Assembly (NCBI GenBank): GCA_002269645.1
Contig: NIVC01000067.1
Location: 620,001 to 684,000, forward strand
Origin: Macrostomum lignano
Taxonomy: Eukaryota
Direction: 5' to 3'
Length of the DNA stretch: 64,000 nt
Positions within the stretch are counted from its first letter, which is position 1. Each line of letters starts with the position of its first letter. The notes under the pieces are model-generated. The model had not been told where the DNA came from and did not search any database. It was given only the letters and a program-made list of their open reading frames with translations. Both the position numbers and the translations under genes were made by a program. Below are positions 8,285 through 48,405 of the stretch, piece after piece.

Positions 8285-8459
8285 TGGTGGTGTTCGTGGA
8301 GCTGGAGATTCCTCTCAGGTAATTGGCCAGAAAGATGACGTGATTAAAGCATGAGAAATGATAACAACTACGTCCCAAAAACTGGCTTTCGAAGCAGGGA
8401 TCGGCAGATTTTTACCTCAAAGGCCAGATAAAGAATCAAGCTCATGGCTGCGGGCCAGA

Positions 8460-11801: not shown

Positions 11802-11886
<85 letters not shown>

Positions 11887-15290: not shown

Positions 15291-15594
15291 CTGACTGAAG
15301 CCTCGGTGTCAGCGGCGAGATTACAGGTAAAGCATGTAAGAGACCACATGTAAAACTGAGAATTATCTGAGAGACTCGCAGGATCCCCAACCCGGGGTTT
15401 TCACCTAAAAGTGACCCGCGGTTTCGGTGATCGCTTCTACATGTGCGTGTTCAAAATTAATATTTGAACTTGCGATAGGCCAGTACTTGTTTCTATTAGT
15501 AGGTTATATAGCTACTCATTGTCTTATAGCTGGTCTTATCCTAATCCCTGTGGACACGCACTGTCGAAGTTTTGCGCATTCTTGTTATTGCTAA

Positions 15595-16117
15595 CTAGAG
15601 ATTCAGTCAAGCACATCCCGTACGTCACAGCACATCAGTAGAGCAAGTATGTATTCAGTCAAGCACATCGCGTACGTCACAGCACATCAGAAGAGCAAGT
15701 ATGTATTCAGTCAAGCACATCGCGTACGTCACAGCACATCAGTAGAGCAAGTATGTATTCAGTCAAGCACATCCCGTACGTCACAGCACATCAGTAGAGC
15801 AAGTATGTATTCAGTCAAGCACATCCCGTACGTCACAGCACATCAGTAGAGCAAGTATGTATTCAGTCAAGCACATCGCGTACGTCACAGCACATCAGTA
15901 GAGCAAGTATGTATTCAGTCAAGCACATCCCGTACGTCACAGCACATCAGAAGAGCAAGTATGTATTCAGTCAAGCACATCGCGTACGTCACAGCACATC
16001 AGTAGAGCAAGTATGTATTCAGTCAAGCACATCCCGTACGTCACAGCACATCAGTAGAGCAAGTATGTATTCAGTCAAGCACATCCCGTACGTCACAGCA
16101 CATCAGTAGAGCAAGTA
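15595..16117. repeat. 52-bp minisatellite, about 10 copies
   Basis: Unit GTATTCAGTCAAGCACATCCCGTACGTCACAGCACATCAGTAGAGCAAGTAT. Confidence 0.95.
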
Positions 16118-17099
16118 TAGTACACTTGTAATTCAAAAAACGTGCAAAACTATCCGAAGGTGGGTTTATGCTGCAAAATACACTGGCAAGATAGAAAGTT
16201 TTCAGTTTTTTTAGCAATTACATCGACAATATCTCACCTTCTAAATTTACAAATTCCAAATTAAACACGTGTGTGTGTGTGTGTGTGTTTCGTTTGAAGT
16301 GCACTCACAAGGTCAGGCAAACAAGCAAGCACAGTTTCAAATTTCAGCTGTCCCTATTTTCTGTACTTTAGCAGCTTGCGGAAAAACGAAGTAAGTTGCA
16401 AGCGAGAAAAGTAAAAGTTTATTAGCTTTACGCGTCAGATATAAATAAGCACGCGATCACATGGGGAGGTGCGCCAAAAAGGTGGCACGAACCCCCTCCC
16501 CCCCGACTTAGCATATTGACTGTCTGTCCGAGTACACCCACCCCCAGCTTGGCGGGCAGGGGGTTTCCGTGCAGATGTACTCGCAATCGCTGGCTGCGTG
16601 CTGATTGGACCGCCACAGTACTGTATTTTTTCCAGCGCAGATTTTTCTCGGCCGAAATTGTCTATGGCGAAACCCCCATTCAGCGCTGTGCAACTGTATA
16701 CTCTGAGCGTTGCCTTGTGAGTGCACCTGGGAGGAAGCACATAAATGTACTTGCTTTATTTGGAAATGAGAAGTCCAGAAATTGAGCTATTGTGAATTTA
16801 GTGCTAAAGAAAATGCTCCTAGAGGGTCGAATGTATCTGGCAAAAAATAAAAAAACGAGATTAAACCATAGCAATCTTGCCTGCTTGTTGATTCTGGTTT
16901 ATTAGTTCATCTGTTGCCCATTTTAATGGGCCAGTCGTTAGCATTGAATTGAAATAAACGTCTGGAAATTTGTCCTTTTATTTAAGGCCGCCTCAGATAA
17001 ATGCGCTATCTACACAACTGTTGACTTTTTTGTGGTAAAATTAAACTCCTACATTGATTTTATGTATAGTTTATCGATTGGTGAGGATCTGGGGTGGGG

Positions 17100-17505
17100 T
17101 GGAACTGATGAACATCCAGGAGCTGGGATGGTATTGATGAACATCCAGGATCTGGGATAGCATTGATGAACATCCAGGATCTAGGATGGTATTTATGAGC
17201 ATCCAGGATCTGGGATGTTATTTATGAGCATCCAGGATCTGGGATGTTACTGATGAACATCCAGGAGCTGGGATGGTACTGATGAACAACCAGGAGCTGG
17301 GATGGTACTGATAAACATCCAGGATCTGGGATGGTACTGATAAACATCCAGGAGCTGGGATGGTACTGATGAACATCCAGGAGCTGGGATGGTACTGATA
17401 AACATCCAGGAGCTGGGATGGTACTGATAAACATCCAGGAGCTGGGATGGTACTGATAAACATCCAGGATCTGGGATGGTACTGATGAACATCCAGGATC
17501 TGATC
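17100..17505. repeat. 29-bp minisatellite, about 14 copies
   Basis: Unit CATCCAGGAGCTGGGATGGTACTGATGAA. Confidence 0.95.
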
Positions 17506-18449
17506 AGAGAGCCTACTATACAAAAATTATATGAAAGGGCAGAAACACATTGGGGCTGGAATATCAATATCAATAAAGAAGTAAGTCAGGGAAGTAACAA
17601 AGCATATAAATTTGAATTGTCAGTATCAATATTTTAAGAAAATGTGTCACTCTTTCAGCGCCAGACAAAAACTGACAGTTACAGCGGAATAAATGATAAC
17701 ACAAGAAATGATTTTAGCGCGAAGACAAATGTAGTCAAATTGAGTCGGACTGCAACAGATCACTGTCACAGTATCGGGGTTCCGAAAATGTCATCAATAT
17801 AATTGGATTTTAATGGTTCAAAGCAGAAATTAGAGTTTAGAAAAAGACCATATGAAATTGGCACTACGAGTGCTACTCGTAATAACAATATCCACCCCAC
17901 TCAGATTGATAAGTCCATGGCTTTGAGGCGTGAGCCACGAACAGGCAGTGTGTACGCACACGCCTGTCAATGAGAGTCAGGGCCGCTGTACACTAGCTCG
18001 TATAATGTGGGCTGACCATATTTTAGGCTGAGCTAAAAACTGTCGCTGCTTTTTCTCCTAGTGTCGACAGGTAAACTGAATAATAAAGTTCTACACATTG
18101 CATAATAACTTCACTTTTTTAGTTAACAGCTTTAATTGAATGGAAGAGCGAATGAGTGCACGTGCACTTTAACAGAATTGCGATCGACTTCGCAGACAAA
18201 AATAATTTGGCAATGGCGTAATCAGGTGTGTTTTTAGGAACCGGACAGTTGAGCAAATACCGCAAATACTAAAATAACTAGATGTGTCACTCGCAATTAA
18301 GTTGTAGAGCGTAGAGCGTCTTCTCTGCTTTCAGAGAAAAACAATGAGGCAGCCAAAATAGCCTTTCCTTAATCGGGGTTTGAGGCTTCATGAGCATATG
18401 AGGTTAGAAATTAACAACAAGCATTTAACTCGATGTACACAAGTGAACG

Positions 18450-18875
18450 CAGGACGGACGAAACTCAGCCTAGGGGATAGGCCCAATCTAGTTCAGCCAA
18501 TGAGAGAGCAGTAAGGAGAGAGGACAAAGTTGGACGTACAAAACTCAGCCTAGGGGCAGGCCCAATCTGGCTCAGCCAATGAGAGAGCAGTAAGGAGAGA
18601 GGTCAAATTCAGACACAGGAGGGCAAGAGGAAAGCCAAACTTTTTATCGGTTTGGCTGGGGGCTGGGGCGCCACCCCTTTTCTCTCTTACTCTCTATGCA
18701 CTGAAGGATTTGGTTTGCAGGTGTCTAGGACAGGCTATTTCAGACAGAGGTGTTTGGGTCAGGTTATTTTGGACAGGTGTCTAGGACAGATTATTACGGA
18801 CAGGTGCCTAGGACAGGTTATTTCTGACACGTGTCTAGGACAGGTTATTTTAGATAGAGATGTCTAGGACAAGTT
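18450..18875. repeat. ~85-bp direct duplication (18450-18610) plus ~29-bp degenerate tandem repeat (18715-18875)
   Basis: AAACTCAGCCTAGGGG..CAGCCAATGAGAGAGCAGTAAGGAGAGAGG occurs twice; GTGTCTAGGACAGGTTATTT-type units occur about 5 times. Confidence 0.85.
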
Positions 18876-19228
18876 ATTTCGGGTCCTATAGCGCATTTTT
18901 GCGAGTTAAATTATCTTGTTACCTTAATATTTGCGGGAAAGCGGCAATAGAGGAAGAGCAATTCCTGTATCTAGCAGCATAAAAGCGTGGAGACACGTGC
19001 ACACGTAATCGTAAAAAATATCTAATAGGTCGTACAAAACAGAGCTAAACTTTCAAGGCACCAAAATCTGTCAATAAAAAATTTACATAATTTACATTCA
19101 AACTGTTTTTACGCACGAGTATTCCAAATAAAGTGTTGCCAATTTGCTATCATACCTCGGACTTCCTAATCACTCAGAACGGGAACTTGAGCGTCATGGT
19201 AGAAAGTACATGCATGACGCTCATTTAA

Positions 19229-19312
19229 AAGCATTGTCTATGGCCAAAGCCTAATACAAATATAAAGGGAAGTAAATGGAGTTTGTATAAGGCTTGGCCA
19301 TAGACAATGCTT
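19229..19312. mobile_element. 84-bp hairpin MITE flanked by TTAA
   Basis: Near-perfect arms AAGCATTGTCTATGGCCAAAGCCTAATACAAA and its reverse complement; TTAA at 19225-19228 and 19313-19316. Confidence 0.65.
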
Positions 19313-19807
19313 TTAAACGAGCCTCGTACTTTTTCCTGTCCTTGAATTGAATTTGTGCCAGCAAGTCAAGCAGACGGCTGTCTATGGTCAAAAATCAAAT
19401 GCCAGGGAAGCGGCATTTTTTGGCTACAGCTACAAGGTTGGCATTTTATCATATGCTCGGCATTCTTTGTACTAACTTGTCAATCGCAATATTCGTATGC
19501 ACAAAAAAACGTTTAACACGCGTAATAAATCTTTTAGGCTCTAGATATTTTTATAGAATACAGTAAATTTAAACAGACTACTCCCCGCTCAAATAAGCAT
19601 GTACATCAAATTGCAAGGAGCATTATACCAAAAAGCAGAATACGTATTAATGCATTAAGGCTCCTAAATCATTCTCAACAATAGAATTTGACTCGATCTA
19701 ATTCTGTAACAGGATCGTACTATTCTAAGCCAGGCAAACAAGCTAAGAAAATCTAACTGTCAATAAGGATTGCTCACTTCACTATTGTACCAGCCAGTGG
19801 TCTTTGA

Positions 19808-22800
19808 TCACACCGAGTAGAGGCACAACCGTTGCGGCGCACTTTTAGTAAAGCTTGGCGGACTGAATGGGCTGAGCCAGCGCCATGAGATTGGCTGGCC
19901 AAACACTCCCTCTAATAGGGACATGCGCGATTGACGTTTCCAGGAATGGCGCTCGCGTTTCAGCGTCTCGATGCCCTGCGGCCGGAGGTTCCGGGTTTGA
20001 TTTTGGGCGATTGTTAAAGGCGGTCTGGTTGCGACTTTATGGGTAGTCCAATGGCAAATTCATGGGTAGTTCAAGGGCGATTTATGTGCAGCTCAAGTGC
20101 GATTTCTGTGTACCGGTAGCTCAAGGGCGATTTCTGTTTACCGGTAGTTCAAGGGCGATTTCTGTGTACCGGTAGCTCAAGGGCGATTTCTGTGTACCGG
20201 TAGCTCAAGGGCGATTTCTGTGTACCGGTAGTTAAAGGGCGATTTCTGTGTACCGGTAGTTAAAGGGCGATTTCTGTGTACCGGTAGTTCAAGGGCGATT
20301 TCTGTGCAGTTCAGGGGCGATTTCTGTGCAGTTCAGGGGCGATTTATGTGCAGTTCAGGGGCGATTTAGGTGCAGTTCAAGGGCGATTTTTATGCAGTTC
20401 AAGAGCGATTTTTATCGGTAGTTGAGAAGTGATTGAAAAAAATATTTAGAGGTAGTTTAAAACAAATTTAGGGGTAGTTTAGTGTCATTAATGAGCGATA
20501 ACTGGGACAGGACAAGGGTGCATTATAGTTGCTAAGGGGAGCTGACTAGCAATTTTAGTGACATATTTAGAAGCGATTCTAAAGACACTTTATTAAGTTT
20601 CGTTACGGACGAGCGGACGAACTCAAAATCACAGTATAACAAGATCACAGTAAAAATGCTCATAAATTCACTCACAGTCTGATCCTTTAAAATGCTGTGA
20701 ATCTGGTCGCCAAACATGATAGCAGTGAACAGGCCGAACATGATGCTCTCGAATATCAGCAGCACCAGCAGGACTATTGGCAGCGGCTGAGTCAGGGTCG
20801 GACGGCATACTGCAGTGGTGTTAATGAAGTGTCGCAATGGCTTTCAGTACACGACATATTACTACCGACTGCACATTTGAAAGCGGCCAGTTACTCACTG
20901 TCCCAGTCCGAGCACTTCACAAAATGGTGAACGGTCATGAAGATGGCAAAGCAGCTGACAGCGCAGATGTACAGCTGTGGGGGTGGCCAAGTTAGTGTTG
21001 ATTGATTCAAGTTATATAGTTCAGCGTCGGGATCATGAAAAACAAGGATCGGGATTCTGGGATTTGGGATCCGGATTTTGGAATTTGGGATCGGGATTCT
21101 GAGATCGGGATTCTGGGATCGGGATTCTGGGATTTAGGATCGGGATTCTGAGAGTTGGGATCGGGATTCTGTGAGTTGGGATCGGGATTCTGTGAGTTGG
21201 GATCGGGATTCTGTGAGTTGGGATCGGGATTCTGTGAGTTGGGACCGGGATTCTGTGAGTTGGGATCGGGATTCTATGCTTTAAAATTCGGATTCTATGA
21301 TTTCGGATCAGGATTCTGGGATTCTGGGATTTGGGATCGGGATTCTGGGATTTAGGATTGGGATTCTGGGATTTGGGATCGGGATTCTGGGATTTAGGAT
21401 TGGGATTCTGGGATTTAGGATTAGGATTCTGGGATTTAGGATTGGGATTCTGGAATTCCGGTTCGGGATTCGGCGCTTTATAATCTGGATTATATGATTT
21501 GGGATGGGGATTCTGGGATTTTGGATCGGGATTCTGGAAATTGGGATCGGGATTCTAGGATTCGAGGATTCAGGAATGGGATTCTGGGATTCAGAAATGG
21601 AATTCTGGTATTCAGGATAAGATAGGATATCCTGAATACCTAAGATAGGATATAGGATTTGGGATCGGGATTATGGGGTTTTGGATCGGGATTCTGGGAT
21701 TTGGAATCGGGATTCTTGGATTTAGGATTGGGTTTCTGGGATTCATTAATGGGATTCTAGGATTTAAGGGTCGCAGGATAATGCCAACTGAATTTGTGAT
21801 TTCAAATTCGACAATTTAACAGTTCACGGAACAGAAAATGAACTTTTAATAATGGATGATTGACAATTGACATCAAATACCAAATCGTGAAAATTCCTAA
21901 ATTAAAGCCAACACGAGATAACCAGATGTCAAGAGGACTCACGGTGAACAGCACGAAGTACTTCTGATTGCACTCCCCGACGCAGTTGTTCACCCACGGG
22001 CAGTGATGATCCATCTTGCGGATGCACCGCCGGCAGACGCTGCAGTGATGCGAGCGGTCGGGCTTGATACTGGAGCACTTGCCGCACTTGTACACAATGC
22101 GGTCGGCGCCCTCAGACCCGCAGCCCAGACTGCGGATGTTCTCCTCTGTGGCGTTGCCGAGCGGCACGGCGCCCTTGGGAGGATTTGGCAGACAAAATTC
22201 AATCTCAAACTGTGATTAGAGTGACAGCAGTTGAGATCCCAAACTGGGATTAGAGTGACAGCAGTTGAGATCCCAAACTGGGATTAGAGTGACAGCAGTT
22301 GAGATCCCAAACTGTGATTAGAGTAACAGCAGTTGAGATCCCAAACTGGGATTATAGTAACAGCAGTGAGATCCCAAACTGGGATTAGAGTGACAGCAGT
22401 TGAGATCCCAAACTGGGATTAGAGTGACAGCAGTTGAGATCCCAAACTGGGATTAGAGTGACAGCAGTTGAGATCCCAAACTGGGATTAGAGTGACAGCA
22501 GTTGAGATCCCAAACTGGGATTATAGTGACAGCAGTTGAGATCCCAAACTGGGATTAGAGTGACAGCAGTTGAGATCCCAAACTGGGATTATTAGAGTGA
22601 CAGCAGTTGAGATCCCAAACTGGGATTAGAGTGACAGCAGTTGAGATCCCAAACTGGGATTAGAGTGACAGCAGTTGAGATCCCAAACTGGGATTATTAG
22701 AGTGACAGCAGTTGAGATCCCAAACTGGGATTAGAGTGACAGCAGTTGAGATCCCAAACTGGGATTAGAGTGACAGCAGTTGAGATCCCAAACTGGGATT

Positions 22801-23455
22801 AGAGTGACAGCAGGAGTTGAGATATCAATTTGGGATCTGAGTGACAGTAATAACCATAGAAACCAGTCGTTTGAGAAAGGAAAAAACTATGGTTGGAATT
22901 AACGTTATGATTTGGACTGAAAATCGTGAGCTGAAAAGTGCAAACTGTTCAAGTGCATCAAACAGAACTCACGGGATCCGAGAACATTGCCTTGCAATGG
23001 GACCAGAATGACAGTCCGATCAGCGAGTGAAAAATGGCACCAGCGATCCAGTTGAAGACGGCGGACTCCGAGTTGGCCAGAATGACGGTGCACGCGACAT
23101 ACTCGGCGAACACCAGCAGCAGCCAGGTGAAGATGGCGCAGAAGATGCCGCAGACGTCCATCACCAGCCAGCAGCCGCGCGGCGGGAACTGCCTGACGCC
23201 GAAGAGGCCGCACAGCCAGTTGCAGCGGAAGACGGCCAGCTTCTTGGGCGGTTTGACGGGGTCCTGGCCGCGCCTGCCGGACACAGTCTTGACTACGATT
23301 TTTGCCACCTTTGGCGCCCCGGGGTACTGGCTAATGCCGCCGCTGCCGCTGGCACCCATGCTGACAGCAGACTGATCCACTCCATTGTCCTCCAGCGACA
23401 CTGCCACCATAGAGGAGCGCTCGGTTAGCTGACCACCACCCGGGAGGGCCATCAT
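19808..23455 (-). CDS. ZDHHC3: DHHC palmitoyl acyltransferase, ZDHHC3/7-like, ~363 aa (exons 22973-23455, 21943-22173, 20899-20974, 20676-20809, 19808-19975)
   Basis: Phase-consistent GT-AG splicing (four GTGAGT donors) gives SDP|GAVP, the [63 protein letters not shown]|GIE.LK and a C-terminal WLSPF. The start could also be 23410 or 23359. Confidence 0.95.
20065..20420. repeat. Intronic 21-28-bp minisatellite (ZDHHC intron 4)
   Basis: Unit CAAGGGCGATTTCTGTG(TACCGG)TAGTT. Confidence 0.9.
21045..21760. repeat. Intronic degenerate GGGATTCTGGGATTT-type repeat (ZDHHC intron 2)
   Basis: Direct inspection. Confidence 0.9.
22205..22815. repeat. Intronic 34-bp minisatellite, about 17 copies (ZDHHC intron 1)
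   Basis: Unit GGATTAGAGTGACAGCAGTTGAGATCCCAAACTG. Confidence 0.95.
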
Positions 23456-25110
23456 TGCTTGATGCTGCTGAAAATATCATTTGAGTAGGCTTTGAGGTAT
23501 CACTGCTCATATTACTCAAAGTAATATTACAGGGACTTTTTTGTTATGGCCTTAGCTTGATTGCAAATGCAGTCACTTTTAGTTGGGGCTCAAATGGAAG
23601 CTTAGCTTGAGTCTGCTCATGCAATAAATCCCCTTGAGGGCCAACCCCCATAGCATAGAAAGTATACATGCCTGAGAATTAGAAATTCAGGGCCACTGTT
23701 ATACTATATGTGAGTCGTCTATATGTGAATGTATATTTATCTATACACTTGTGTGCCTGCTCAGGGAGCTAGCAGAATGGGCAGTAATACCTCTTGCTAG
23801 TTGTGTGGCAAAGCTACTTAAACTGCGCTAGAAGGCATGCAGCCTCCCTGCCTTTAATAAAGAGGGTCTAGCAAAAGTTATATAGGCATAAACATAAATG
23901 ATTAAGATATAGCTTAGAAGTTAGATAAAATCAAAGTTTTGGTTTAAGTAGAATTGGGATTTTAATTTCTATTAGGATCTTGGGATTTTGAGATTATAGT
24001 AATGAAACCAGAATCCCCAGGCCTTATCTAATTACAAGGATATATAAAGGCTAAATAAGATCAATTTTTAGGATTGTAATCCCAGTTTTTCTAGGATTCG
24101 ATGATTTTAAGATTAGGAATATTCTTATGTCATCCCAGAGTCAAGAAGATGGCAAAGTATGTAATTGGAATAAACTTTGGAAGGCAATCTATATATTGCA
24201 TATTAGCTATATGCTATCTAGGCACTACTTTTTCTATACTTCTAATCCTAATCCTAGGCTATAGAAATTAATTTGTAGAAAAAAATATACCGAAATTAAA
24301 TATCCAAAAAGGTAAGTTAGATGAAAATACTTTGTTTTTGACAAATTCATATAGGCCTAATTCTTAGATTAGAATTCATACTGACTAGTCACTACACAAC
24401 AATTGTATGGTTTGATGCCAAAGATTCGGTGTGTACTAGAGTTGTGTCCCACATGAACCAGTTGTATAGCCAAAGACTTTGGCTTTCCAGTTGTAGTTGC
24501 AAAGTTAAAGTGCCAGGTGCGCTCAGTTGCTTTATTTAAAAGTGAAAGTACAGAACAAAACAAACCAACAAAAGTAATGGCATTAACAGTAGAGTACTGT
24601 ATTAATTTCTCTCTCATCTTTGACAGTCTCGTTCCGCCTCAGCTACTGTGCAAGTAAACTTCCTTAGATCTTAGGCTCTTCTTCTTCTTCGTAACACAAC
24701 TACAGTAGACAAACGTTGCGTTGTTAAAAATATCTAGAAATTTTCAAGTTAAATGTGTGCTTAGTGTATTTCTGCAGAAACGTATAGTTAAACGAAATAC
24801 AATATAAATTAAAAAACCATCAAGTACTGATTATTAGAAAGTTAAATATAGGAATAACAATATAAAAATCAATTGCTACAAATAATTTTAAAGATAAATT
24901 TTATTAGTCTTAGATTGTATATGATAATAAATTTAACACGTGCAAGTCTGAACACTAAATTAATATATGCAAACGTTCCGAAATCCAAACGTCTGCTTAC
25001 CACCAGACCGATAACAGGAATCAGTGATCAAGTCTAGTTTACTCTCAAGCCCAAGAAATATTTTAACTCACACTGTTTTAGTGTAACTGTGTGATTAAGC
25101 TATAAATATC
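23456..25110. promoter_or_regulatory. Candidate bidirectional promoter region between ZDHHC and APT1
   Basis: 1655 bp separate the two divergent ATGs. There is a local CpG cluster at about 24600-24730 in an otherwise CpG-poor region, and a minus-strand acceptor TTTTCAG ending at 23468 implies an upstream 5'UTR exon or trans-splicing. Confidence 0.45.
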
Positions 25111-28100
25111 ATGGCATTGGCAGCCTATTCTTCTGTGATAAAACGACCATCCAAAATTCACACTGCCACAGTAAGTTATGTCTGTTAAAGAGGCTTTATA
25201 GGTAAATGATGTAGTCTATCAAAAATGCTAGCTTCGATGAAAATTATAAATGCAACAAATAGATTTTTTATTTCTCATTAGGCAGCTATGGAGTATATAT
25301 GGCTCAAGTAAAATAGCTAAATATGCTTTGTATAGGTATAGCCTTTGTGTATAGCTAATGCATTATTTTAATCAAATAACAGACTTCAGAATTAGAAAAA
25401 GAATGTCAGCTTGAAGAATTAAAATACTTTTTCAGTTACAGTAAAGGTATTGCAGAGCATTTTATCAGTTTAGGCCTATTTTCTCATCTCATTAAAATAG
25501 GATATCAAAAAGCAAACTGGGATACTAAAATTCCATACTTAAAAGCATGAAAACTTTAGACTTAAGATAGGCCCATTATATTATATTATTACTATTAGCT
25601 ACCAGGCCAATAGGCATGTATAATCGTTTTTGCTAGAAGATATTAATTATAATGTTTTAATATCAACTTTTTGTTCAAAGCAAAATTTTAGCAATGTTTT
25701 ATGCCATAAGGGCAAGATTTTACTTAAAAACATGACCAATTTTCATTTAAAAGCCAAAAGTTTGTTAGCTAACCCTTTGCCTCTCCTAGATTGTTTTTAT
25801 GAGCTATTGTAATTAAGTAGCAAATTCTAATAAGTATGACCTATAAATCTATGATACCTTGCTTATTATTATATGAATAAATATAATATTTTTATTTAAT
25901 AATGCTAGTACTCATGAAATGCTTTTGCTTTATTTATTATATAGACTTAATTTCATGTATTTTTCTTAAAGCTTTTTATTTCCCATTTCCATAATTGTTA
26001 ATATGATATTCTTATTGAGCTCCTTATATTACAAGTAGTGTTTTAATGATAATGCTACTTTTATCTAAAAATCTACTTACCTTATTTTTCCTATTCAGTT
26101 AGTTTTCCTACATGGCCTTGGCGACAATGGACATGGATGGTCAGAGATTCTTTGGCCACTGCTGCCACCCTACTGCCGCTTGGTGTGCCCTCATGCGCCA
26201 GTGCGACCCCTCACTGTCTATGGTGGCGAGCAAATTCCCGCCTGGTTTGATGTGCTTGCTAGGAGTCCCAGTTCGGCTGTGCAGGTGAATCTAGAACTTC
26301 AAAAAGTTTATAGTCATCCTTCTCGCCTTTCATAGTGTTGACACAGTCTATGATATATTAGACTTTGGGGGGGAGGCGTAGCCTAGTGGTCTAGCGCGGC
26401 GCTCCGATGTGTCAGCGGCTCTCAGGCTCGATTCCAAGTGCAGTCACATTAATTTTTGGGTTGAATTTGGAATCTCGGCTTGGCTGTGCTCGTGCAATTA
26501 ACGCCCCGAGAGCCAATCCCCAAGGAACAGTGAGGTGTACATGCCTAACAATAAATAGAGTTATCTCGCCTCGCCTCTCTCCAGTTGTGTGAAAATTTCG
26601 CCTAATGGCCGGTTCACGTTACTGCTACTATATAGCTCCGCGGGTCCAAGATTGATCAAATCAATTTCAACATGGGTCTGAACCAACTGCAAATTGATTT
26701 GATCAATCTTTGGACCCACGTAGCTACTAGCGGTAATGTGAACCCCACCTTAAGTGTGCCAGGATGCACACAGCCCTCCTGCCTCTCGAAAAGTATTAGA
26801 CTTTGGGAGCTTGAATTCATCTGAAAGTTCTTGCTACAGCCTCAAATGAGTAGCTACTCTATGAAATCTGTTTTCTTTCATGAGATATTAAATATACTCA
26901 GCAACCCCTCAATTTACTTGTTTTATCAAGAGGCACAGAAGTCATTAACCTTTATTTACACGTTACTGAATCCTCAATGGCATTGCTTAACTTCCGTGCC
27001 GCATGACGTAAGCGTAAGTTAAGGCGCTGCTGAGTAAAATTACAGTCTGAATTGCAGAAACTTATTACTTGATTGTTATTTTTGATGATGTAGCAGCATT
27101 TGTAGTAGTAGTGAAGTACTAAAAAGTAGTGATACTTTTAACCGTTGCTTTCGTTTTATAGCTTCCTGTGATATAAAACTTTATGAACTGATAGCGGCAA
27201 ATCTCTTCTACAGACTGCTTTTTGAATTTTTAAAATTGATACCAGAGAACAAAAGTTATACCCACGAAAGAAACAGTACCTGTACCATAGAGTTACACAA
27301 ATTATAGGCAGAGCTTCACGAGATCCATGCCGAGTAAGCTTTGATGAATTGTTGATTTCAGCTTGTTCAACCTGTCAGCGATCTCTCTAATGGTCAAGAA
27401 GATCAGGTCGATGAAAGTATGGCCGCCACGTCCGATGCTGATCTGCCAAGTCAGTCGTTCCCTCGCTGAACTGCTCAATCCATCGATAAACTGTCATTTT
27501 GCTGACCGCAGAGGATCCGTGCGCAGAGCAAAGTTTTGCGTGAATCTCTGAGGCACTATGGCCAGCACCCCAAAGAGTGAAGATGGCACTTTGCTGAGCA
27601 ACAACTGAGTGCACATCCATGTGTGTTGTCGAGTATGGGCAATGGATAAATAATCAGCGGTCCCAGTGCCGGCGCGAGCCATAGACAAATCGTTGTCACG
27701 TGCTGCGACCGCTGATTCTTTGCATTGTTTTTCTATTTGACGATCCTACAGACAATGCATTGCTTGTAGTAATTGATTGTTCTGCATTAAAAATGTGAAT
27801 AATGATCGTCAAATTGCTAGACAATGAAATCATGAACGAATCGCAAAATGCAAGCTCCTCTGTTTGCAAGTAAATTAATGAATTTAATGCTTTATTTTTC
27901 TGCGCATGATCCCGTCCATAGACAAATTTCAGTCAGTCACAGTGAGCATCATTTTGCAATTGGGCTTTGCTTAAACCATGGACTTCTATACTTAGCAGAT
28001 GCTAAGTATAGAAGTCCATGGCTTAAACAAGACATCTATCGATGCCTTCTTAATGAATGAGTGCAGAAGTCGACTATTATAAATTTCGATATAGTTTGTG

Positions 28101-30068
28101 TAACTCTATGGTACAGGTACTGTTTCTTTTGTGGGTATAACTTTTGTTCTCTAGTATCAATTTTAAAAATTCAAAAAGCAGTCTGTAGAAGAGATTTGCC
28201 GCTATCAGTTCATAAAATTTTTAATCACAGGAAGCTATAGAACGAGAGCTACGGTTAAAAGTATCACTACTTTTTGGACACCCCTCGTAGTTCCATTTTT
28301 AATGCTTTAGAAACCAATAATCCACAAGACCCTTGGTAACTCTCTGGTCGATTTCGCCGCTTTGCGCTTCCACCTGATTGTTGCCATGCCTGCAAACTCG
28401 ATCCAGGACCCATCCAGCGTAGCCGAAGCTGTCAGCAGTTTGAACCGGCTGCTAGCAGCCGAAGTCGCCGCGTTGCCGTCGACCGGCCGGCTACTCCTTG
28501 GTGGCTTCTCCCAGGGCGGCGCGCTCGCCCTGTACGCGGGACTGGCCGGAGGTTTGAGCTGCCGCCTGGCTGGCCTTGTTGGCCTGTCCTGCTACCTGCC
28601 GCTGATGGAGCAGGCGTACGGCAAGACTGAGTGTAGGCGCGACTGTTTAATTTTTTGTTAACTTTTAGATATCCTTTCTGACTGGTTCAGTAGGTGTTCC
28701 TACTGTGTTCAATGGGTTCCCAATGAGCTCTTGGCTTACCTTATAACAGTAATAGGGTAAAAGCGGAGTCAGGACGTGGCTTGATTTTCAATCTGCATTT
28801 TCAATATTTTTCACCCTGCAGGAATAACACGAGCTTAAGGGTATTGGCAAAGATCGCCACTTGAACAAACGTCACTCTAAAGGCCAGTTTTGTTCGTATA
28901 GCTTGGGGCTTATTAGCTAGATGTACAGTTGTAAACCAGGTGAAAGTGAGAGTTGGTCTTTTGATAGTTGATGAGTGTAATACTACTTTACACTGTTTCA
29001 TAATAATTTCAAACATCTCCAATTCTCCATCAAATACTTGTTATCCATACACTTCTTCACGTCTTATTTCTAAATCTAAACCCAGGTTCGATCTTCTATC
29101 AATTTTAAATGCAACAAAGCCAATTGCCTTGTCCCATATGGCGCAATCATTAAAATATGAATACCTTTGCTACGAGAAGGTCAGGACCGCTGTACTAATG
29201 CTCCATGTCGGACAGCGGCATTGCAATCGCTAATCCACAGCTACAAACTCTGCAGGCGGTGTTGCATCGGGCAGCGGCCAGTCGCAGCCGCCCGTGTTCC
29301 TCGCCCACGGTGACGCCGACGAAGTTGTGCTGCCAGAGAGAAGCCGGGCAGCTGGCCAGCTGATGCGGGAGAAGCTGGGCGTGACCGATCTGCGGTATCA
29401 CGTCTACCCAGGACTGGAGCACTGCAATGGCAATCAGGCGAGTTCTCAACCTCCTGGCGTTGCTTGCTATTTTAACCAATGTGCTGGTAGGTAGATGCAA
29501 CTTCTGGCTGTAGTCACTCTGCAGCCAACGATGTAGCCGTTAAGATTGTCTCTTGATCTTCTGACCCCCCTGACCCTGCATGGCAGGTTAAACTACGGCA
29601 AAAAGGTTGCATTTTATTCTTGTTCATTCTCTTCCTATTTTGTATCTATTGTAGTCTTATGCAAAGCGAGACATTTACCTGTAGCTGGTTCAATCGTGTC
29701 TGTGCAAATTTAAGAAAATCAGACAGTGTACATACCTGTAGCTACCATGCAGTGTACCGCAACGGTTTAATTAGCTCGCTCGTACCTTCTTGAGCGTCCA
29801 TCTTCATGCACCGTTTCCATTCCCAATGAAGTAATACAGCTACATGTATTTATAATTAGTTGACTCACTGGATTTCACAGCTGAACCCTTATAGCTAGGC
29901 TTTCATAGATTCACTCAGACTGAGAATACAGACTATACATTTTCAGTTTTGATCACCGTAGATCACTCTACATCTATACACATGTAGAGCCTATATAAAT
30001 ATCCATTTCAGGAAATGGCCGACTTAAAAGACTTCATCTGGTCCGTGCTGTCGGAGAAGCAACCTTAA
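25111..30068 (+). CDS. LYPLA1: Acyl-protein thioesterase (APT1/LYPLA1/2-like), ~237 aa (exons 25111-25170, 26099-26284, 28407-28620 or 28632, 29241-29437, 30012-30068)
   Basis: HTAT|LVFLHGLGDNGHGW, CPHAP.RP, PAWFD, GGFSQGG (nucleophile Ser), LSCYLP, FLAHGDAD (Asp), YPGLEH (His) and EMADLKDFI. All splice phases are compatible. The last intron has a GC donor (CAG|GCGAGT). Confidence 0.95.
26370..26793 (+). mobile_element. tRNA-derived SINE with 14-bp TSD (APT1 intron 2)
   Basis: A-box TAGCCTAGTGG (26379-26389) and B-box-like GGCTCGATTCC (26425-26435). TATTAGACTTTGGG is duplicated at 26356-26369 and 26794-26807. Confidence 0.8.
26606..26750. mobile_element. PIF/Harbinger-like 145-bp MITE nested in the SINE
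   Basis: Long imperfect inverted arms (GGTTCAC.TTAC.GCTA..GGGTCCAA.GATTGATCAAATCAATTT); TAA at 26603-26605 and 26751-26753. Confidence 0.7.
27109..28287 (-). mobile_element. Internally deleted mariner element with transposase N-terminal HTH remnant
   Basis: About 190-bp inverted repeats (27121-27305 and 28090-28275). The right end reads TA|CGAGGGGTGTCCAAAAAGT on the minus strand; the left end is decayed. ORF 27387-27620(-) SASEIHAKLCSAHGSSAVSKMTVYRWIEQFSEG..LADQHRTWRP resembles the mariner N-terminal HTH. Confidence 0.85.
27975..28022. mobile_element. 48-bp perfect hairpin flanked by TTAA (micro-MITE) inside the mariner
   Basis: 21-bp arms CCATGGACTTCTATACTTAGC / GCTAAGTATAGAAGTCCATGG with a 4-nt loop and TTAA on both sides. 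Confidence 0.6.
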
Positions 30069-31379
30069 AAATGAAAGAGACCGGCATGCTGAAAATCGCA
30101 TTTACTGCTGCTGCTGTAACAGTTGTTGCTTGTGTTGAGCTAATTTTGTCATCGTTTTAGCCAGAAATTCTGTCACATTCATAATTATAAGGATAACGGC
30201 AAGTTCATCCAACTGATGATGCATAGCGCTAAGCTTAATATTAATCACCGATGTCAATCTGCCTGTCAATTCTGCATATCTATTTCCATAAGCCATAAGA
30301 AGGATCAATTGTCAAGATGGAAGCTCAGATTTTTACAGATTAGTGGATAGATTTATGATCTGAGAAAATTACAAAAAGATTACGCCTTTTCACTATCGAG
30401 GGGAGGGCGCTGCCACACCCCCCCCCCGATTGCCCCGGAATCATTAGTGCGGGTCTCCGCTCGCGAAGTTAAAATGAGAAAGGAGAGGGAAAATAGAGAG
30501 GAAAGGGATCAAGGAGGGAGGGCACGAGGATGGGAGGGGCAGAAGAAAGTGGAAGAGGGAGGAAAGATCATCTCAACCATCCAATGAAAATCTCACCCCT
30601 GATAGCATCCCCAAACAGTAGTTTGTGTGACGGAGAACTGAATTCATACCTGTATCATAGGGCTAGAATGAGCTCTCAGACACACCTCAAACCTCATCTC
30701 AACATCAAACAAGCTTGAGTTTCTGTGACTGAGAGTTTTGGCGGACAATACTTTTAACATTGAATAAAGTAAAACAAGCGACAAAGTCTCAAAACTCAAA
30801 ACGGCTCTCTGACTAAACCACCGTAATAAACGAAGTCTAAGTAAAAAAATAATAGCTACGATGTGAGAAATTTATTGATAGTGGTGTCTCTGGCAGATTG
30901 ACGTCGCAATTGAACTCACAATGTCGAAAACTTTAGCAAGGGCCGAACACTATACTGCATAGTTCTTGTTATATTAAATTTTCGACGTGGAGTTTCGAGC
31001 TTATGAAGTTTCAACCTTGTGAGAGTGGCTGCTATTGGCTCTCTGCAGTGCAGTCTGACAAAACTTAATTATGGTCATGCAATTGTAGATGTCCAGTTAT
31101 GAAAATATTGGTTTGCTTGACAAAAAGACAAGCAGCTTTAAATCAAGATTGACACATTTTCGATTCCGGCTATAAATGTTAATTAACTTTAGTATGTATA
31201 GAGTAACATCACATGAAATCCAATGATGTAATATGATTATGAAACACGTATATTAATTGCAAGCGTTTTAAAGACGACGGCTATATATACAATTTTCATA
31301 AAGAAATTTCGAACAACTAATTGTTGAAAAGCAATTATTCAAAGCGAATTGAATGAGAACAAGTACATGAAAATCAATA

Positions 31380-31522
31380 TTAAAAATGTAGCCAACTATA
31401 GCTAATGGTGGGGGGCAAGTGGATTTTGCCGAAGAACAAGCCATGCAGCTCCTCATCGGCCTCATCTGGGTCTTGACCCTTCTCCGGGATAAAGACCCAC
31501 TCCAGCAGCTTGAATAGCGCAC
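31380..31522 (-). CDS. Putative orphan terminal exon (ALFKLLEWVFIPEKGQDPDEADEELHGLFFGKIHLPP...)
   Basis: Good acceptor TCTCTTCACCTAG at 31523 followed by a GC3-rich open frame; the upstream partner exon is uncertain. Confidence 0.3.
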
Positions 31523-32222
31523 CTAGGTGAAGAGAACTAGCTATATGGTAATTTGCAGTGTTGTGAGTTGAAGTCAAACTTTTACTCAAAGCGGGTTCTT
31601 ATAGCTTTTTTGAGTTGCAAGTAGAGAGTTAGCCAGCAACTATATAGCTATGCCTATTTTTTACAACCGAGAACTCTGTCTAAAGAGTTCTGATAGATCG
31701 AGTTACTACTCAGACTAATGGTCGCGGAAATTGCTTATTTCTTAAAACCTAGTATGCAAATGGCTTTGCAAGTCGGCAACACAAGCTCATAAATGCACCA
31801 ATTATAGCTATGTACTGGTAGAACTTCATATCCGCAAATACGCTTTGGTTTCCATTCGGACATTTATCCGACTGTAAAAGTCCTGGGACAACTATATAGC
31901 AATGCATACGAGCGTACTGAATATATGGGATCGATCCTCCAATTGACACATTAAAACTAATGGGATTTTTATGGAATTCACAATTTTGTTTCAAATAGTA
32001 TAAGCTAAAAACTTAATGTTAGCCACCACCAATCTTTTGCACCTTGGTCCTACGAGTACAAGATGATTGCCAGTTTTGTCTATTTAATAATTACTAACTA
32101 TTCTATATGCTTTATAGTAGTCTTGTTTTATCGCGCAGCCATTTGACTGAAAAGTGTACAGCTTGTATAATTACTCTCATATCCCGGAGATTTGTACACG
32201 CAAGTGCATGGATCGGATGAAG

Positions 32223-35200
32223 CTATGAACAAGATCCGTCACTCGGCGTCGTCGACACCGGGGGAATCCGATGCAGCCAGAGCATGGCCAGCGGTCCTCC
32301 TCGCATGAGCCGGCCGTCCGGCACGGGCCCGGCCAGTTTCTGCGGCCGAATCCGGCGCAACGGCTCTCGGCCGATCGTGCCGGCGTCCCAGACGGTCAGC
32401 GGCAAGCGCAGGCCCTCTGACCAGCTGCAGTTGGCTAGGCACAGGTCCAGCAGGGAGGCGCCAACGAATGCGCCTGGTTGGGAAGGCGCCAAACGGGACA
32501 GCAGCGTCACGAGATGGTGGCTGGTGTTCACAGTGAGGATGGCCGACCTGCTGTGCTGGTCCAGCGGTGTCCAGGGTGGCACGTCTCTGTGAAATGTGAA
32601 TAGGTTGTAGAATTAAGCAAAATACTCCTATAAAATGTTTCTGCATGTAGTTACATGTAATTCATTACATCCACTGTACTTGAAGCGTATTACCTATAGC
32701 TAGAAAAGAGTAGTTGCCTTTTTTACTGTACTTTATTGTCTTTAGATTCCAATTAAATTTACTCAATCAACAGTACAGTTGCAATTGCGACAGGCCGCGG
32801 TGCCCCCTACGTGACTCGCTCGTTGCATACTATCTTTCTTGAAGGCGGCGAGCTCTGGTACATAAATGTACACTGTAGATGTACATGTAATCAGTAACCT
32901 TTACGCTTGCATGTAATTGTGCCAAGTCCCATTCCGCCCCTGCAATTAGAGTTCCATTGAATCAAAACTCCAAAGCGGTCAAAAAATACGTGTCATATAC
33001 ATCCACCATTATTCTTATGTCCTATGTCCAAGGTTTTGTCTTATGTCCCAGCAGCCATCAGCACATTATTAGTGTTATTTAGTAATTAGCCACTACCTGA
33101 CCACTGTAGCAGAATCTGCATGGTTTTAAAGCCGCTAGGAATTTTGCTTTCCCTATATACTTTTTCCCTCGTCATATTTCCTCCATTTTGCTGGGGAGGG
33201 GGCTGCATGGTTTGCACGCTAATCCCCCTTCTAATAGTCAAGTCGAAGGCCGAAAACCTTTAAATTAGCCATACGAGTGTAGCCTCGCTCTTGTAGTTAA
33301 GAATTGCTTGATGGGATTGCAATAATTTGTCGACGTCACTGCAGACTGGGAGCTCTCCACAATTGCCTAATTTTACAGTCCCGTCAGCCTGCGTTACATG
33401 TTAAGTCCTCCGTAGGGGGTCCATGGCGCCAGAGCCATATAAGTTCGCTAATTGTCTCTGGCGGCTCTGCCGGCCACTGGCTGCACTGACCTGAAATTTG
33501 TACTTGCGACTTTTCACTGCTGAAGCCGGTTCGCATTACCGCCTGTAGCTCTGTTTGTTAAACATTGCTCAAATCAAGCTAAAAATGGGCTTGAACCAAG
33601 GGCTGCGTGGATTCGGGGGCCGCCGTCATTAAATTTGATTGGACACCATTTCATTGACTAAAGCGCCATTTCATTGACTAAAGCGCCATTTCATTGACTA
33701 AAGCGCCATTTCATTGACTAAAGCGCCATTTCATTTGACTAAAGCGCCATTTCATTGACTAAAGCGCCATTTCATTTGACTAAAGCGCCATTTCATTTGA
33801 TTAAATTGCCATTTCATTTGATTAAATTGCCATTTCATTGACTAAAGCGCCATTTCATTGACTAAAGCGCCATTTCATTTGATTAAATTGCCATTTCATT
33901 TGATTAAAGCGCCATTTCATTTGACTAAAGCGCCATTTCTTTTGACTAAAGCGCCATTTCATTTGATTAAATTGCCATTTCATTTGATTAAATTGCCATT
34001 TCATTGACTAAAGCGCCATTTCATTGACTAAAGCGCCATTTCATTTGATTAAATTGCCATTTCATTTGATTAAATTGCCATTTCATTTGATTAAATTGCC
34101 ATTTCATTGACTAAAGCGCCATTTCATTGACTAAAGCGCCATTTCATTTGATTAAATTGCCATTTCATTTGATTAAATTGCCATTTCATTTGATTAAATT
34201 GCCATTTCATTGACTAAAGCGCCATTTCATTGACTAAAGCGCCATTTCATTTGATTAAATTGCCATTTCATTTGATTAAAGCGCCATTTCATTTGACTAA
34301 AGCGCCATTTCTTTTGACTAAAGCGCCATTTCATTTGATTAAATTGCCATTTCATTTGATTAAATTGCCATTTCATTTGATTAAATTGCCATTTCATTGA
34401 CTAAAGCGCCATTTCATTGACTAAAGCGCCATTTCATTTGATTAAATTGCCATTTCATATGATTAAATTGCCATTTCATTTGATTAAATTGCCATTTCAT
34501 TGACTAAAGCGCCATTTCATTGACTAAAGCGCCATTTCATTTGATTAAATTGCCATTTCATTTGATTAAAGCGCCATTTCATTGACTAAAGCGCCATTTC
34601 ATTGACTAAAGCGCCATTTCATTTGATTAAATTGCCATTTCATTTGATTAAATTGCCATTTCATTTGATTAAATTGCCATTTCATTGACTAAAGCGCCAT
34701 TTCATTGACTAAAGCGCCATTTCATTTGATTAAATTGCCATTTCATTTGACTAAAGTGCCATTTCATTTGACTAAAGTGCCATTTCATTGACTAAAGCGC
34801 CATTTCATTTGACTAAATTGCCATTTCATTTGATTAAAGCGCCATTTCATTTGACTAAAGCGCCATTTCTTTTGACTAAAGCGCCATTTCTTTTGACTAA
34901 AGCGCCATTTTTGACTAAAGCGCCATTTTTTTACTACAGCGTCATTTCATTTGACTAAAGTGCCATTTCATTTGACTAAAGTGCCATTTCATTGACTAAA
35001 GCGCCATTTCATTTGACTAAAATGCCATTTCATTTGACTAAAGCGCCATTTCATTTGACTAAAGCGCCATTTCTTTTGACTAAAGCGCCATTTCTTTTGA
35101 CTAAAGCGCCATTTTTGACTAAAGCGCCATTTTTTTAGTACAGCGTCATTTCATTTGACTGTAGTGCCATTTCATTTGATTGGGGAGCCATTTCATTTGA

Positions 35201-43718: not shown

Positions 43719-48405
<4,687 letters not shown>

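What the first reader, a model, noticed from the sequence alone, without database searches (positions are those of the whole stretch)
19808..30068. Palmitoylation writer and eraser genes head-to-head
Seen: a complete ZDHHC3/7-like DHHC acyltransferase (minus) and a complete APT1/LYPLA-like thioesterase with Ser-Asp-His triad (plus) diverge with only 1655 bp between ATGs. Established: DHHC enzymes add and APT enzymes remove S-palmitate, and divergent pairs often share a bidirectional promoter. Inference: a co-regulated acylation/deacylation cycle module, an arrangement I do not know to be described in animals.
Basis: partly seen in the sequence, partly recalled or inferred. Interest (0 to 1): 0.75.

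Follow-up and report, generated by a model that had tools for sequence, protein, structure and literature searches.

The report
Flatworm palmitoylation enzyme genes as neighbours
In the flatworm Macrostomum lignano, an intact gene for an enzyme that adds palmitate to proteins and one for an enzyme that removes it do sit back-to-back 1.65 kb apart, but nothing found here shows they are regulated together, and in other animals the first gene's conserved partner is a different gene (EXOSC7), so this is most likely an ordinary, lineage-specific neighbour pair.

Summary
The window is Macrostomum lignano scaffold NIVC01000067.1. It holds a complete five-exon ZDHHC3/7-type palmitoyltransferase gene on the minus strand (23455..19808). 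It also holds a complete five-exon APT1/2-type thioesterase gene on the plus strand (25111..30068). Exactly 1655 bp separate the two ATGs.

The interpretation as a co-regulated writer/eraser module gained no support.
- The spacer exceeds the 1 kb used to define bidirectional promoters. It is AT-rich and no better conserved between the two assembled haplotypes than the introns.
[quoted passage not shown] The ATG distance therefore says little about the transcription start sites.
- The pairing is absent in every other animal examined. In Lottia, Lineus, Ptychodera and vertebrates, ZDHHC3 lies head-to-head with EXOSC7.
- The human ZDHHC3/7-to-APT2 link acts through Cys2, which the flatworm protein lacks.

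The best reading is two housekeeping genes juxtaposed by a lineage-specific rearrangement. Low interest. Expression data and other Macrostomum genomes would settle it.

The parts
19808..23455 (-). ZDHHC3/7-type DHHC palmitoyltransferase gene. CDS exons 23455..22973, 22173..21943, 20974..20899, 20809..20676, 19975..19808; 363 aa, or 362 aa from the conserved second ATG at 23452.
   Evidence: Hand-built model with GT-AG introns. Pfam DHHC 7e-35. One substitution from UniProt A0A1I8HF81. DHHC-CRD motif intact.
25111..30068 (+). APT1/2 (LYPLA1/2)-type acyl-protein thioesterase gene. CDS exons 25111..25170, 26099..26284, 28407..28632, 29256..29437, 30012..30068; 236 aa.
   Evidence: Model is identical to PAA92002.1 / Mlig001722g3. 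Abhydrolase_2 2e-44. APT1 9e-41 in the PDB. Ser117, Asp179 and His213 are invariant.
23456..25110 (.). 1655-bp spacer between the two start codons. Its 100-bp windows are 16-52% GC, mostly 25-45%; it is CpG-poor, with no tandem array and no long dispersed repeat within the window. It presumably holds the promoter(s).
   Evidence: It is 96.6% identical to the sister haplotype, against 94.8-97.3% for the introns.
23468..23473 (-). Candidate 3' splice or SL trans-splice acceptor TTTCAG, 12 nt upstream of the first ATG of the DHHC gene.
   Evidence: Sequence read. Conserved in L001. Fits the [T/C]TNCAG motif reported for M. lignano SL acceptors (PMC8629364). Actual use is not shown.
25075..25081 (+). 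Candidate 3' splice acceptor CTGTTTTAG, 29 nt upstream of the APT ATG.
   Evidence: Sequence read. Conserved in L001. It has TAG rather than CAG, so it is a weaker fit to the SL acceptor motif. Actual use is not shown.
29438..30011 (+). GC-AG intron (donor GCGAGT) between APT exons 4 and 5.
   Evidence: This is the only junction that reproduces the deposited protein.
27121..28275 (-). Decayed mariner/Tc1-like element with 186-nt terminal inverted repeats, inside APT intron 2. It is not part of either gene's function.
   Evidence: Inverted repeat I1, 95% complementary. HTH_48 (Mos1 transposase) remnant at 27387..27620, 2.3e-9.
20065..22813 (.). Three separate minisatellite blocks that fill most of DHHC introns 4, 2 and 1: 20065-20411 (28- and 22-bp units), 21046-21766 (21-bp unit) and 22202-22813 (34-bp unit, about 18 copies).
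   Evidence: Array lengths differ between haplotypes.

Best explanation
These are two ordinary, independently functioning housekeeping genes of Macrostomum lignano. One encodes a Golgi-type ZDHHC3/7 protein S-acyltransferase. The other encodes a cytosolic APT1/2 acyl-protein thioesterase. They became divergent neighbours through a rearrangement specific to the Macrostomum, or at most flatworm, lineage.

Each gene is transcribed outward from the 1.65-kb AT-rich spacer. Their mRNAs are probably matured at the splice acceptors lying 12 and 29 nt upstream of the ATGs. That maturation would be either SL trans-splicing or removal of a 5'UTR intron, so the true transcription starts are unknown.

Shown: the gene structures, the family membership, the orientation, the spacing, and the absence of this pairing in the other animals examined.

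Inferred: that the juxtaposition is not a selected regulatory module, and that any co-expression would reflect shared housekeeping character or shared open chromatin.
For: - Intact genes of well-known families.
- The window is identical to GenBank scaffold NIVC01000067.1.
- The same arrangement occurs in contig NIVC01002065.1 and, truncated by a contig end, in NIVC01002394.1. These copies are 95-100% identical throughout, introns included, so they share the arrangement by descent. M. lignano is a recent hidden polyploid with a redundant assembly (PMC5730564; PMC10468722).
- The spacer is 96.6% identical between haplotypes, against 94.8-97.3% for introns and 99-100% for CDS. There is no sign of extra constraint.
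- ZDHHC3 orthologues lie head-to-head, 212-415 bp away, with an RNase_PH gene in Lottia, Lineus and Ptychodera. In Lottia the neighbour is identified as EXOSC7/RRP42.
- Human ZDHHC3/EXOSC7 is a listed divergent pair 136 bp apart, kept in 7 vertebrates (PMC2871058 Table S5; PMC6114488).
- No APT gene lies within 10 kb of ZDHHC3 in four non-flatworm species. No DHHC gene lies within 10 kb of APT in two.
- No EXOSC7 is present in the 64-kb window.
- Gene density is about one gene per 10.5 kb (72,846 genes in 764 Mb) with a mean gene length of 7.5 kb. A 1.65-kb spacer is therefore unremarkable.
Against: - For this specific enzyme pair, chance adjacency is rare: roughly 0.1-2% per genome under my assumptions.
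- In human cells ZDHHC3 and ZDHHC7 are precisely the acyltransferases that act on APT2 (10.1101/2020.06.18.157545). The pairing is therefore biologically suggestive.
- Expression data were not available, so co-regulation is not excluded.
- Close relatives (other Macrostomum species, other flatworms) could not be examined.
Confidence: 0.72

Rival explanations
1. The 1.65-kb spacer is a shared bidirectional promoter. It co-expresses writer and eraser so that the palmitoylation cycle is stoichiometrically coupled, making this a selected regulatory module.
For: - Divergent orientation and a short spacer.
- Functionally opposed enzymes.
- In human cells ZDHHC3/7 acylate APT2 and this is needed for its activity.
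- Conserved divergent pairs in metazoa tend to be functionally related (PMC2871058).
- Chance adjacency of this exact pair is low.
Against: - The pair is not conserved in any other species examined, and the ancestral partner of ZDHHC3 is EXOSC7.
- The ATG-ATG distance exceeds the 1-kb criterion. Enrichment of short divergent spacers was not seen in non-vertebrate animals.
- The spacer is no more conserved than the introns.
- The flatworm APT lacks Cys2, the residue through which ZDHHC3/7 act on human APT2.
- The TSS positions are unknown, and acceptors upstream of both ATGs suggest long outrons or 5'UTR introns.
Confidence: 0.15
2. A neutral neighbour effect. The two genes have separate core promoters but share an open-chromatin or enhancer neighbourhood. 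They are mildly co-expressed as a by-product of proximity, with no selection for coupling.
For: - General behaviour of head-to-head pairs reported in the literature (abstracts listed; PMC2871058).
- Both genes are conserved housekeeping types.
- In M. lignano, regions up to 2 kb upstream of the TSS were sufficient to drive faithful reporter expression (PMC5730564). The two control regions would therefore overlap physically.
Against: There is no direct data either way. This reading is hard to distinguish from the best explanation without perturbation experiments.
Confidence: 0.1
3. An artefact: a mis-assembly joins two unlinked genes, or one of the genes is a dead copy.
For: The Mlig_3_7 assembly is redundant and has known errors. 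The DHHC gene is not annotated in this scaffold.
Against: - The same junction occurs in an independently assembled contig with 3-5% non-coding divergence.
- Both reading frames are intact with canonical splice sites.
- There are only 1-3 amino-acid differences between copies.
Confidence: 0.02

Closest known systems
Vertebrate ZDHHC3 / ZDHHC7 (Golgi DHHC S-acyltransferases)
   Same: Same Pfam domain, a complete DHHC cysteine-rich motif, a TM-rich architecture, a TGIE motif and a conserved C-terminal tail. Identity to ZDHHC3 orthologues is 47-55% over 72-95% of the protein.
   Different: It has an N-terminal extension of about 90 residues with no match in other ZDHHC3 proteins (coverage). It also lacks the EXOSC7 head-to-head neighbour found in mollusc, nemertean, hemichordate and vertebrates.
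Human APT1 / APT2 (LYPLA1 / LYPLA2), PDB 1FJ2 and 5SYN
   Same: Abhydrolase_2 fold, a GFSQG nucleophile elbow and a Ser-Asp-His triad in register. It is much closer to APT1/2 than to LYPLAL1.
   Different: Identity to the closest non-Macrostomum hits is only 34-41%. There is no N-terminal Cys2, the S-acylation site used by ZDHHC3/7 on human APT2; the first Cys is at residue 46. It has an insertion in the loop before the catalytic Asp.
ZDHHC3-EXOSC7 divergent gene pair (candidate bidirectional promoter, Davila Lopez et al. 2010, Table S5)
   Same: The same DHHC gene is in a head-to-head arrangement with an unrelated housekeeping gene.
   Different: The partner here is APT, not EXOSC7. The spacing is 1655 bp between ATGs, against 136 bp in human and 212-415 bp between called genes in Lottia, Lineus and Ptychodera.
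SL trans-spliced genes of M. lignano (Wudarski 2017; Ustyantsev & Berezikov 2021)
   Same: Both are conserved protein-coding genes with a pyrimidine-rich acceptor just upstream of the ATG. The DHHC acceptor fits [T/C]TNCAG.
   Different: No SL-containing read was available here, and the APT acceptor ends in TAG. A cis-spliced 5'UTR intron is equally possible.

Membership tests
DHHC protein S-acyltransferase, ZDHHC3/7 subfamily | DHHC cysteine-rich domain with the full Cx2Cx9HCx2Cx2Cx4DHHCx5Cx4Nx3F pattern | tested here: met
   Residues 191-234 match by regex. Pfam PF01529 at 7e-35, 120 bits against a cutoff of 28.7.
DHHC protein S-acyltransferase, ZDHHC3/7 subfamily | Four transmembrane helices flanking the cytosolic DHHC domain | tested here: inconclusive
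   Kyte-Doolittle scan. Three segments pass a 1.6 threshold: 97-115, 235-253 and 273-291. The expected TM2, around residues 131-151, falls below it. No dedicated TM predictor or structure model was run.
DHHC protein S-acyltransferase, ZDHHC3/7 subfamily | Closest relatives are ZDHHC3/7 rather than other DHHC subfamilies | tested here: met
   All named top hits are ZDHHC3 or ZDHHC3-like, E 1e-96 to 1e-86. DHHC20, DHHC9 and DHHC5 in the PDB match only at 7e-27 or worse.
DHHC protein S-acyltransferase, ZDHHC3/7 subfamily | Acyltransferase activity and Golgi localisation | not testable with these tools
   This needs biochemistry and imaging.
Acyl-protein thioesterase APT1/2 (LYPLA1/2) | Abhydrolase_2 fold with a GxSxG nucleophile and a Ser-Asp-His triad | tested here: met
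   PF02230 at 2e-44. GFSQG at residues 115-119. S117, D179 and H213 are invariant across 12 orthologues. They align to the human APT1 triad.
Acyl-protein thioesterase APT1/2 (LYPLA1/2) | Closer to APT1/2 than to LYPLAL1 or bacterial carboxylesterases | tested here: met
   APT1 9e-41, APT2 4e-38, LYPLAL1 4.7e-19, bacterial carboxylesterases 1e-20 to 7e-24.
Acyl-protein thioesterase APT1/2 (LYPLA1/2) | N-terminal Cys2 S-acylation site. This feature belongs to the human enzymes' membrane cycle, not to the fold. | tested here: not met
   The protein starts MALAAYSS and the first Cys is residue 46. In alignment A1, MCGN is present only in the chordate sequences.
Head-to-head gene pair with a bidirectional promoter | Adjacent genes on opposite strands, transcribed divergently | tested here: met
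   Gene models. The same orientation is annotated in the sister contig.
Head-to-head gene pair with a bidirectional promoter | Transcription start sites less than 1000 bp apart | not testable with these tools
   Only the ATG-ATG distance is known (1655 bp). Acceptors upstream of both ATGs mean the mRNA 5' ends and the TSSs are undetermined. The criterion is taken from PMC2871058.
Head-to-head gene pair with a bidirectional promoter | Adjacency conserved across species | tested here: not met
   Absent in Lottia, Lineus, Ptychodera, Watersipora, Branchiostoma and Tyrophagus. In human, ZDHHC3 is flanked by TGM4 and EXOSC7. Close relatives were not available.
Head-to-head gene pair with a bidirectional promoter | Correlated expression, or a shared cis element shown by reporter | not testable with these tools
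   No expression data are reachable. The gene identifiers were not found in the searchable literature.
SL trans-spliced gene of M. lignano | [quoted passage not shown] | tested here: inconclusive
   DHHC has TTTCAG 12 nt before the ATG. APT has TTTTAG 29 nt before the ATG. Both are conserved in L001, and the motif is from PMC8629364. The absence of an upstream donor cannot be judged from DNA alone.
SL trans-spliced gene of M. lignano | RNA-seq reads carrying the 35-nt SL joined at that acceptor | not testable with these tools

The most novel reading that the evidence does not exclude
In the Macrostomum lineage, the deeply conserved ZDHHC3-EXOSC7 bidirectional pair was broken and replaced by a ZDHHC3-APT pair. 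The spacer of the new pair acts as a shared promoter or enhancer that locks the Golgi S-acyltransferase and its opposing thioesterase into co-expression. This would be an evolved 'writer/eraser' cassette in an animal genome.
Probability: 0.1. Interest if true: 0.45.

Novelty: new member of a known kind. Interest (0 to 1): 0.15.

Why it matters
If the two genes really shared a promoter, this would be a rare animal example of opposing enzymes of a reversible lipid modification being hard-wired into co-expression. M. lignano has working transgenesis, so it could be tested there. As the evidence stands, the value is mostly corrective.
- The pair is a lineage-specific neighbourhood of two annotated housekeeping genes.
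- The by-product is more informative: the ZDHHC3-EXOSC7 head-to-head pair, already listed for vertebrates, extends to a mollusc, a nemertean and a hemichordate. It was lost in M. lignano and in a bryozoan.
- There is also a practical warning. In trans-splicing animals, ATG-to-ATG distance and 5'RACE or CAGE do not locate promoters.

Tried and rejected
I used the database twins P0121, P0242 and P0241 instead.
- The Lingula ZDHHC3 (P0043) was not on record.
- The mouse locus (L006, Celera assembly) had no neighbour annotation. tblastn with invertebrate EXOSC7 fragments found nothing within 10 kb upstream. The vertebrate pairing therefore rests on published tables.
- I searched the window for an EXOSC7 remnant. 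The only hit was one weak match (7453-7557) to an intronic, repeat-like Ptychodera fragment, which I dismissed.
- Phylogenetic footprinting of the spacer was uninformative. The only comparators are haplotypes 3-5% divergent, and L001 and L003 are identical to each other.
- tRNA and Rfam scans of the whole window found nothing.
- A literature search for the gene identifiers found nothing. A search for any described DHHC/APT head-to-head pair found none.
- The sigma-70 promoter scanner was not used because it is irrelevant to a eukaryote.
- Structure prediction was not run because sequence-level family assignment is unambiguous.
- Other flatworm orthologues could not be retrieved. The homologue lists are capped at the best 120 hits, and these are dominated by molluscs, vertebrates, arthropods and bacteria.


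Full report
**Source and identity of the window.** The window is eukaryotic, repeat-rich DNA with GC-rich exons and AT-rich non-coding sequence. The two proteins identify it as Macrostomum lignano. The DHHC protein differs by one residue from UniProt A0A1I8HF81, and the thioesterase is identical to GenBank PAA92002.1, BOX15_Mlig001722g3. Locus L002, fetched around PAA92002.1 from scaffold NIVC01000067.1 of assembly Mlig_3_7 (GCA_002269645.1), is 100% identical to window 15111-35000. By that offset the window corresponds to about 620,001-684,000 of the scaffold.

**Checking the observation.** On the minus strand I assembled five coding exons: 23455..22973, 22173..21943, 20974..20899, 20809..20676 and 19975..19808. 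All have GT-AG borders and together give 363 aa. The product matches Pfam DHHC at 7e-35. It carries the complete DHHC cysteine-rich pattern at residues 191-234 and a TGIE motif. Its best named relatives are ZDHHC3 or ZDHHC3-like proteins of molluscs, nemerteans, a hemichordate and vertebrates, at 47-55% identity.

On the plus strand there are five coding exons: 25111..25170, 26099..26284, 28407..28632, 29256..29437 and 30012..30068. They give 236 aa, and the fourth intron is GC-AG. The model reproduces the deposited protein exactly. That protein comes from a transcriptome-guided annotation (PMC5730564). It matches Abhydrolase_2 at 2e-44. In the PDB it matches human APT1 at 9e-41, APT2 at 4e-38 and LYPLAL1 at only 5e-19. 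Ser117, Asp179 and His213 are invariant in an alignment with eleven orthologues.

The spacer between the ATGs is 23456..25110, which is 1655 bp. One refinement is needed. In the sister copy the first DHHC ATG reads TTG, so the conserved start is the second ATG (23452), as in the 362-aa database models.

**Surroundings.**
- Three of the four DHHC introns are largely minisatellite arrays.
- APT intron 2 holds a decayed mariner/Tc1-like element with 186-nt inverted termini and an HTH_48 remnant.
- The spacer's 100-bp windows are 16-52% GC, mostly 25-45%. It has almost no CpG and no tandem array. Apart from one 62-bp, 81% match, it has no other copy in the window.
- No tRNA or Rfam family is present anywhere in the window.
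- Other genes in the window are unrelated to palmitoylation: a non-LTR retrotransposon, a profilin and a TTL-family exon.

**Is the adjacency conserved?** Within M. lignano the same head-to-head arrangement is annotated in contig NIVC01002065.1 (L001: DHHC 4729-8327 minus, APT 10001-15191 plus). It is also present, cut by the contig end, in NIVC01002394.1 (L003). These copies are collinear with the window through exons, introns and spacer at 95-100% identity. L001 and L003 are identical to each other in the compared part. M. lignano is a recent hidden polyploid and the assembly is redundant. These copies are therefore alleles or young homeologues that inherited the arrangement, not independent evidence.

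Outside the species the picture is different.
- In Lottia gigantea, Lineus longissimus and Ptychodera flava, the ZDHHC3 orthologue lies head-to-head, 212-415 bp away, with a 289-292-aa RNase_PH/RNase_PH_C gene.
- An exon of the Lottia neighbour matches human exosome component RRP42 (EXOSC7) at 7e-21, far better than RRP45.
- In human, ZDHHC3 is flanked by TGM4 and EXOSC7 (PMC6114488).
- Table S5 of Davila Lopez et al. 2010 lists ZDHHC3/EXOSC7 as a divergent pair 136 bp apart, kept in seven vertebrates.
- In the bryozoan Watersipora, neither EXOSC7 nor an APT gene lies within 10 kb.
- From the other side, APT orthologues of Branchiostoma floridae and the mite Tyrophagus have no DHHC gene within 10 kb.
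- The window has no trace of EXOSC7.

The ancestral bilaterian partner of ZDHHC3 is therefore EXOSC7. The APT partnership is derived in the lineage leading to M. lignano. Whether it predates the genus could not be tested, because no other Macrostomum or flatworm orthologue was returned.

**Is there evidence for a shared promoter?** None was found, and several points weaken the inference.
- The customary criterion is TSSs less than 1 kb apart. The enrichment of short divergent spacers is a feature of tetrapods, most marked in mammals, and was not seen in fishes or non-vertebrate animals (PMC2871058). Here the only measurable distance, ATG to ATG, is 1655 bp.
- M. lignano has 72,846 annotated genes in 764 Mb with a mean gene length of 7.5 kb. 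Spacers of a few kb are therefore the norm.
- The spacer is 96.6% identical between haplotypes. This lies within the range of the introns (94.8-97.3%) and below the CDS (99-100%).
- Each ATG is preceded by a good 3' splice acceptor that is conserved in both haplotypes: TTTCAG 12 nt upstream of the DHHC ATG and CTGTTTTAG 29 nt upstream of the APT ATG.
[quoted passage not shown] The reported acceptor motif is [T/C]TNCAG, and trans-spliced genes are enriched for conserved genes (PMC5730564 and PMC8629364). From the published fractions I calculate a prior of about 45% that a human-conserved gene is trans-spliced.
- Either trans-splicing or a 5'UTR intron would uncouple the mRNA 5' end from the ATG. 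For trans-spliced genes, 5'RACE or CAGE would report the SL junction rather than the TSS.

**The functional link.** In human cells APT2 must be S-acylated on Cys2 by ZDHHC3 or ZDHHC7 to be active on membranes (10.1101/2020.06.18.157545). The particular DHHC subfamily found here is thus the one known to act on an APT. But the flatworm APT begins MALAAYSS and has no cysteine before residue 46. In the alignment, the MCGN N-terminus is confined to the chordate sequences. That mechanism cannot simply be transferred.

**Chance.** I assumed about 20 DHHC loci, 2-8 depalmitoylase loci and 15-22 thousand distinct loci. Under these assumptions the expected number of adjacent DHHC/thioesterase pairs per genome is 0.004-0.02, and about a quarter of that for the divergent orientation. 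This is low. However, the pair was noticed post hoc among a very large number of possible 'opposing enzyme' or 'same pathway' pairs, for which some chance neighbours per genome are expected.

**Verdict.** The most likely explanation (about 0.7) is an ordinary, lineage-specific juxtaposition of two housekeeping genes. Each is transcribed outward from an AT-rich spacer and probably spliced just upstream of its ATG. A shared bidirectional promoter or selected module remains possible (about 0.15) but has no positive evidence. A neutral neighbour effect (about 0.1) and an artefact (about 0.02) complete the list.

The genes are already in public annotation, and in the sister contig their protein accessions are consecutive (PAA61157.1 and PAA61158.1). 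The searches run here found no paper that describes a DHHC/APT head-to-head pair. Interest is low.

Noticed in passing
L004 4333-15175; L005 5711-15517; L007 2427-91895: ZDHHC3 lies head-to-head, 212-415 bp away, with an RNase_PH gene in a mollusc, a nemertean and a hemichordate. In Lottia the neighbour is identified as EXOSC7/RRP42. This extends a divergent pair already listed for seven vertebrates (136 bp in human) to bilaterian depth. It is absent in M. lignano and in the bryozoan Watersipora (L011).
   Followed up: partly
window 19808-23455: The DHHC gene of this scaffold is intact but was not among the called genes of NIVC01000067.1. Only the sister copy on NIVC01002065.1 (PAA61158.1) is annotated. 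This is an annotation gap.
   Followed up: partly
window 23453-23455 vs L001 8328-8330: The first ATG of the DHHC reading frame in the window reads TTG in the sister haplotype. The start codon shared by both copies is the second ATG (window 23452).
   Followed up: yes
window 20065-20411, 21046-21766, 22202-22813: Three of the four DHHC introns consist mostly of different minisatellites (28/22-bp, 21-bp and 34-bp units). The aligned array stretches differ between haplotypes: the 34-bp array spans 612 bp in the window, and its alignments to L001 all fall within about 236 bp.
   Followed up: partly
window 27121-28275: A non-autonomous mariner/Tc1-like element with 186-nt, 95% complementary terminal inverted repeats lies in APT intron 2. 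It contains a Mos1-type HTH_48 remnant (27387-27620, minus strand). Its interior differs between haplotypes.
   Followed up: partly
window 29438-30011: The last APT intron is a GC-AG intron (donor GCGAGT). It is required to reproduce the deposited protein.
   Followed up: yes
L003 2757-7969 (protein P0241, PAA58257.1): The annotated 174-aa APT product of this contig skips exon 2 in frame (186 nt). This removes the HGLGD...CPHAP region. It may be an alternative isoform or an annotation error.
   Followed up: no
window 26355-26440: A tRNA-like stretch (…GTAGCCTAGTGGTCTAGCGCGGCGCTCCGATG…GGCTCGATTCCAAG…) lies in APT intron 2. It could be a tRNA-derived SINE or a decayed tRNA gene. ARAGORN and Rfam call nothing here.
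   Followed up: partly
window 43811-47627 (minus strand): A non-LTR retrotransposon with long open frames: an APE-type endonuclease (46407-47627), a reverse transcriptase plus RNase H (44302-46296) and a 163-aa downstream ORF.
   Followed up: partly
window 54617-55006 (+) and 60961-61584 (+): A single-exon profilin ORF (Pfam 8e-16) and an exon of a tubulin-tyrosine-ligase-family gene (3e-17). Neither is related to palmitoylation.
   Followed up: no
window 10331-12181 (+): A 616-aa GC-rich open reading frame with long poly-Q tracts and no Pfam match. It may be a real low-complexity protein gene.
   Followed up: no
L001 vs L003: Contigs NIVC01002065.1 and NIVC01002394.1 are identical over the compared part of their shared region (DHHC exon 1 into APT intron 2, about window 22850-27586). 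This points to redundant assembly of one haplotype. Relative to the window, L001 also carries about 3 kb of extra sequence downstream of the DHHC gene (window ~19277/19319).
   Followed up: no
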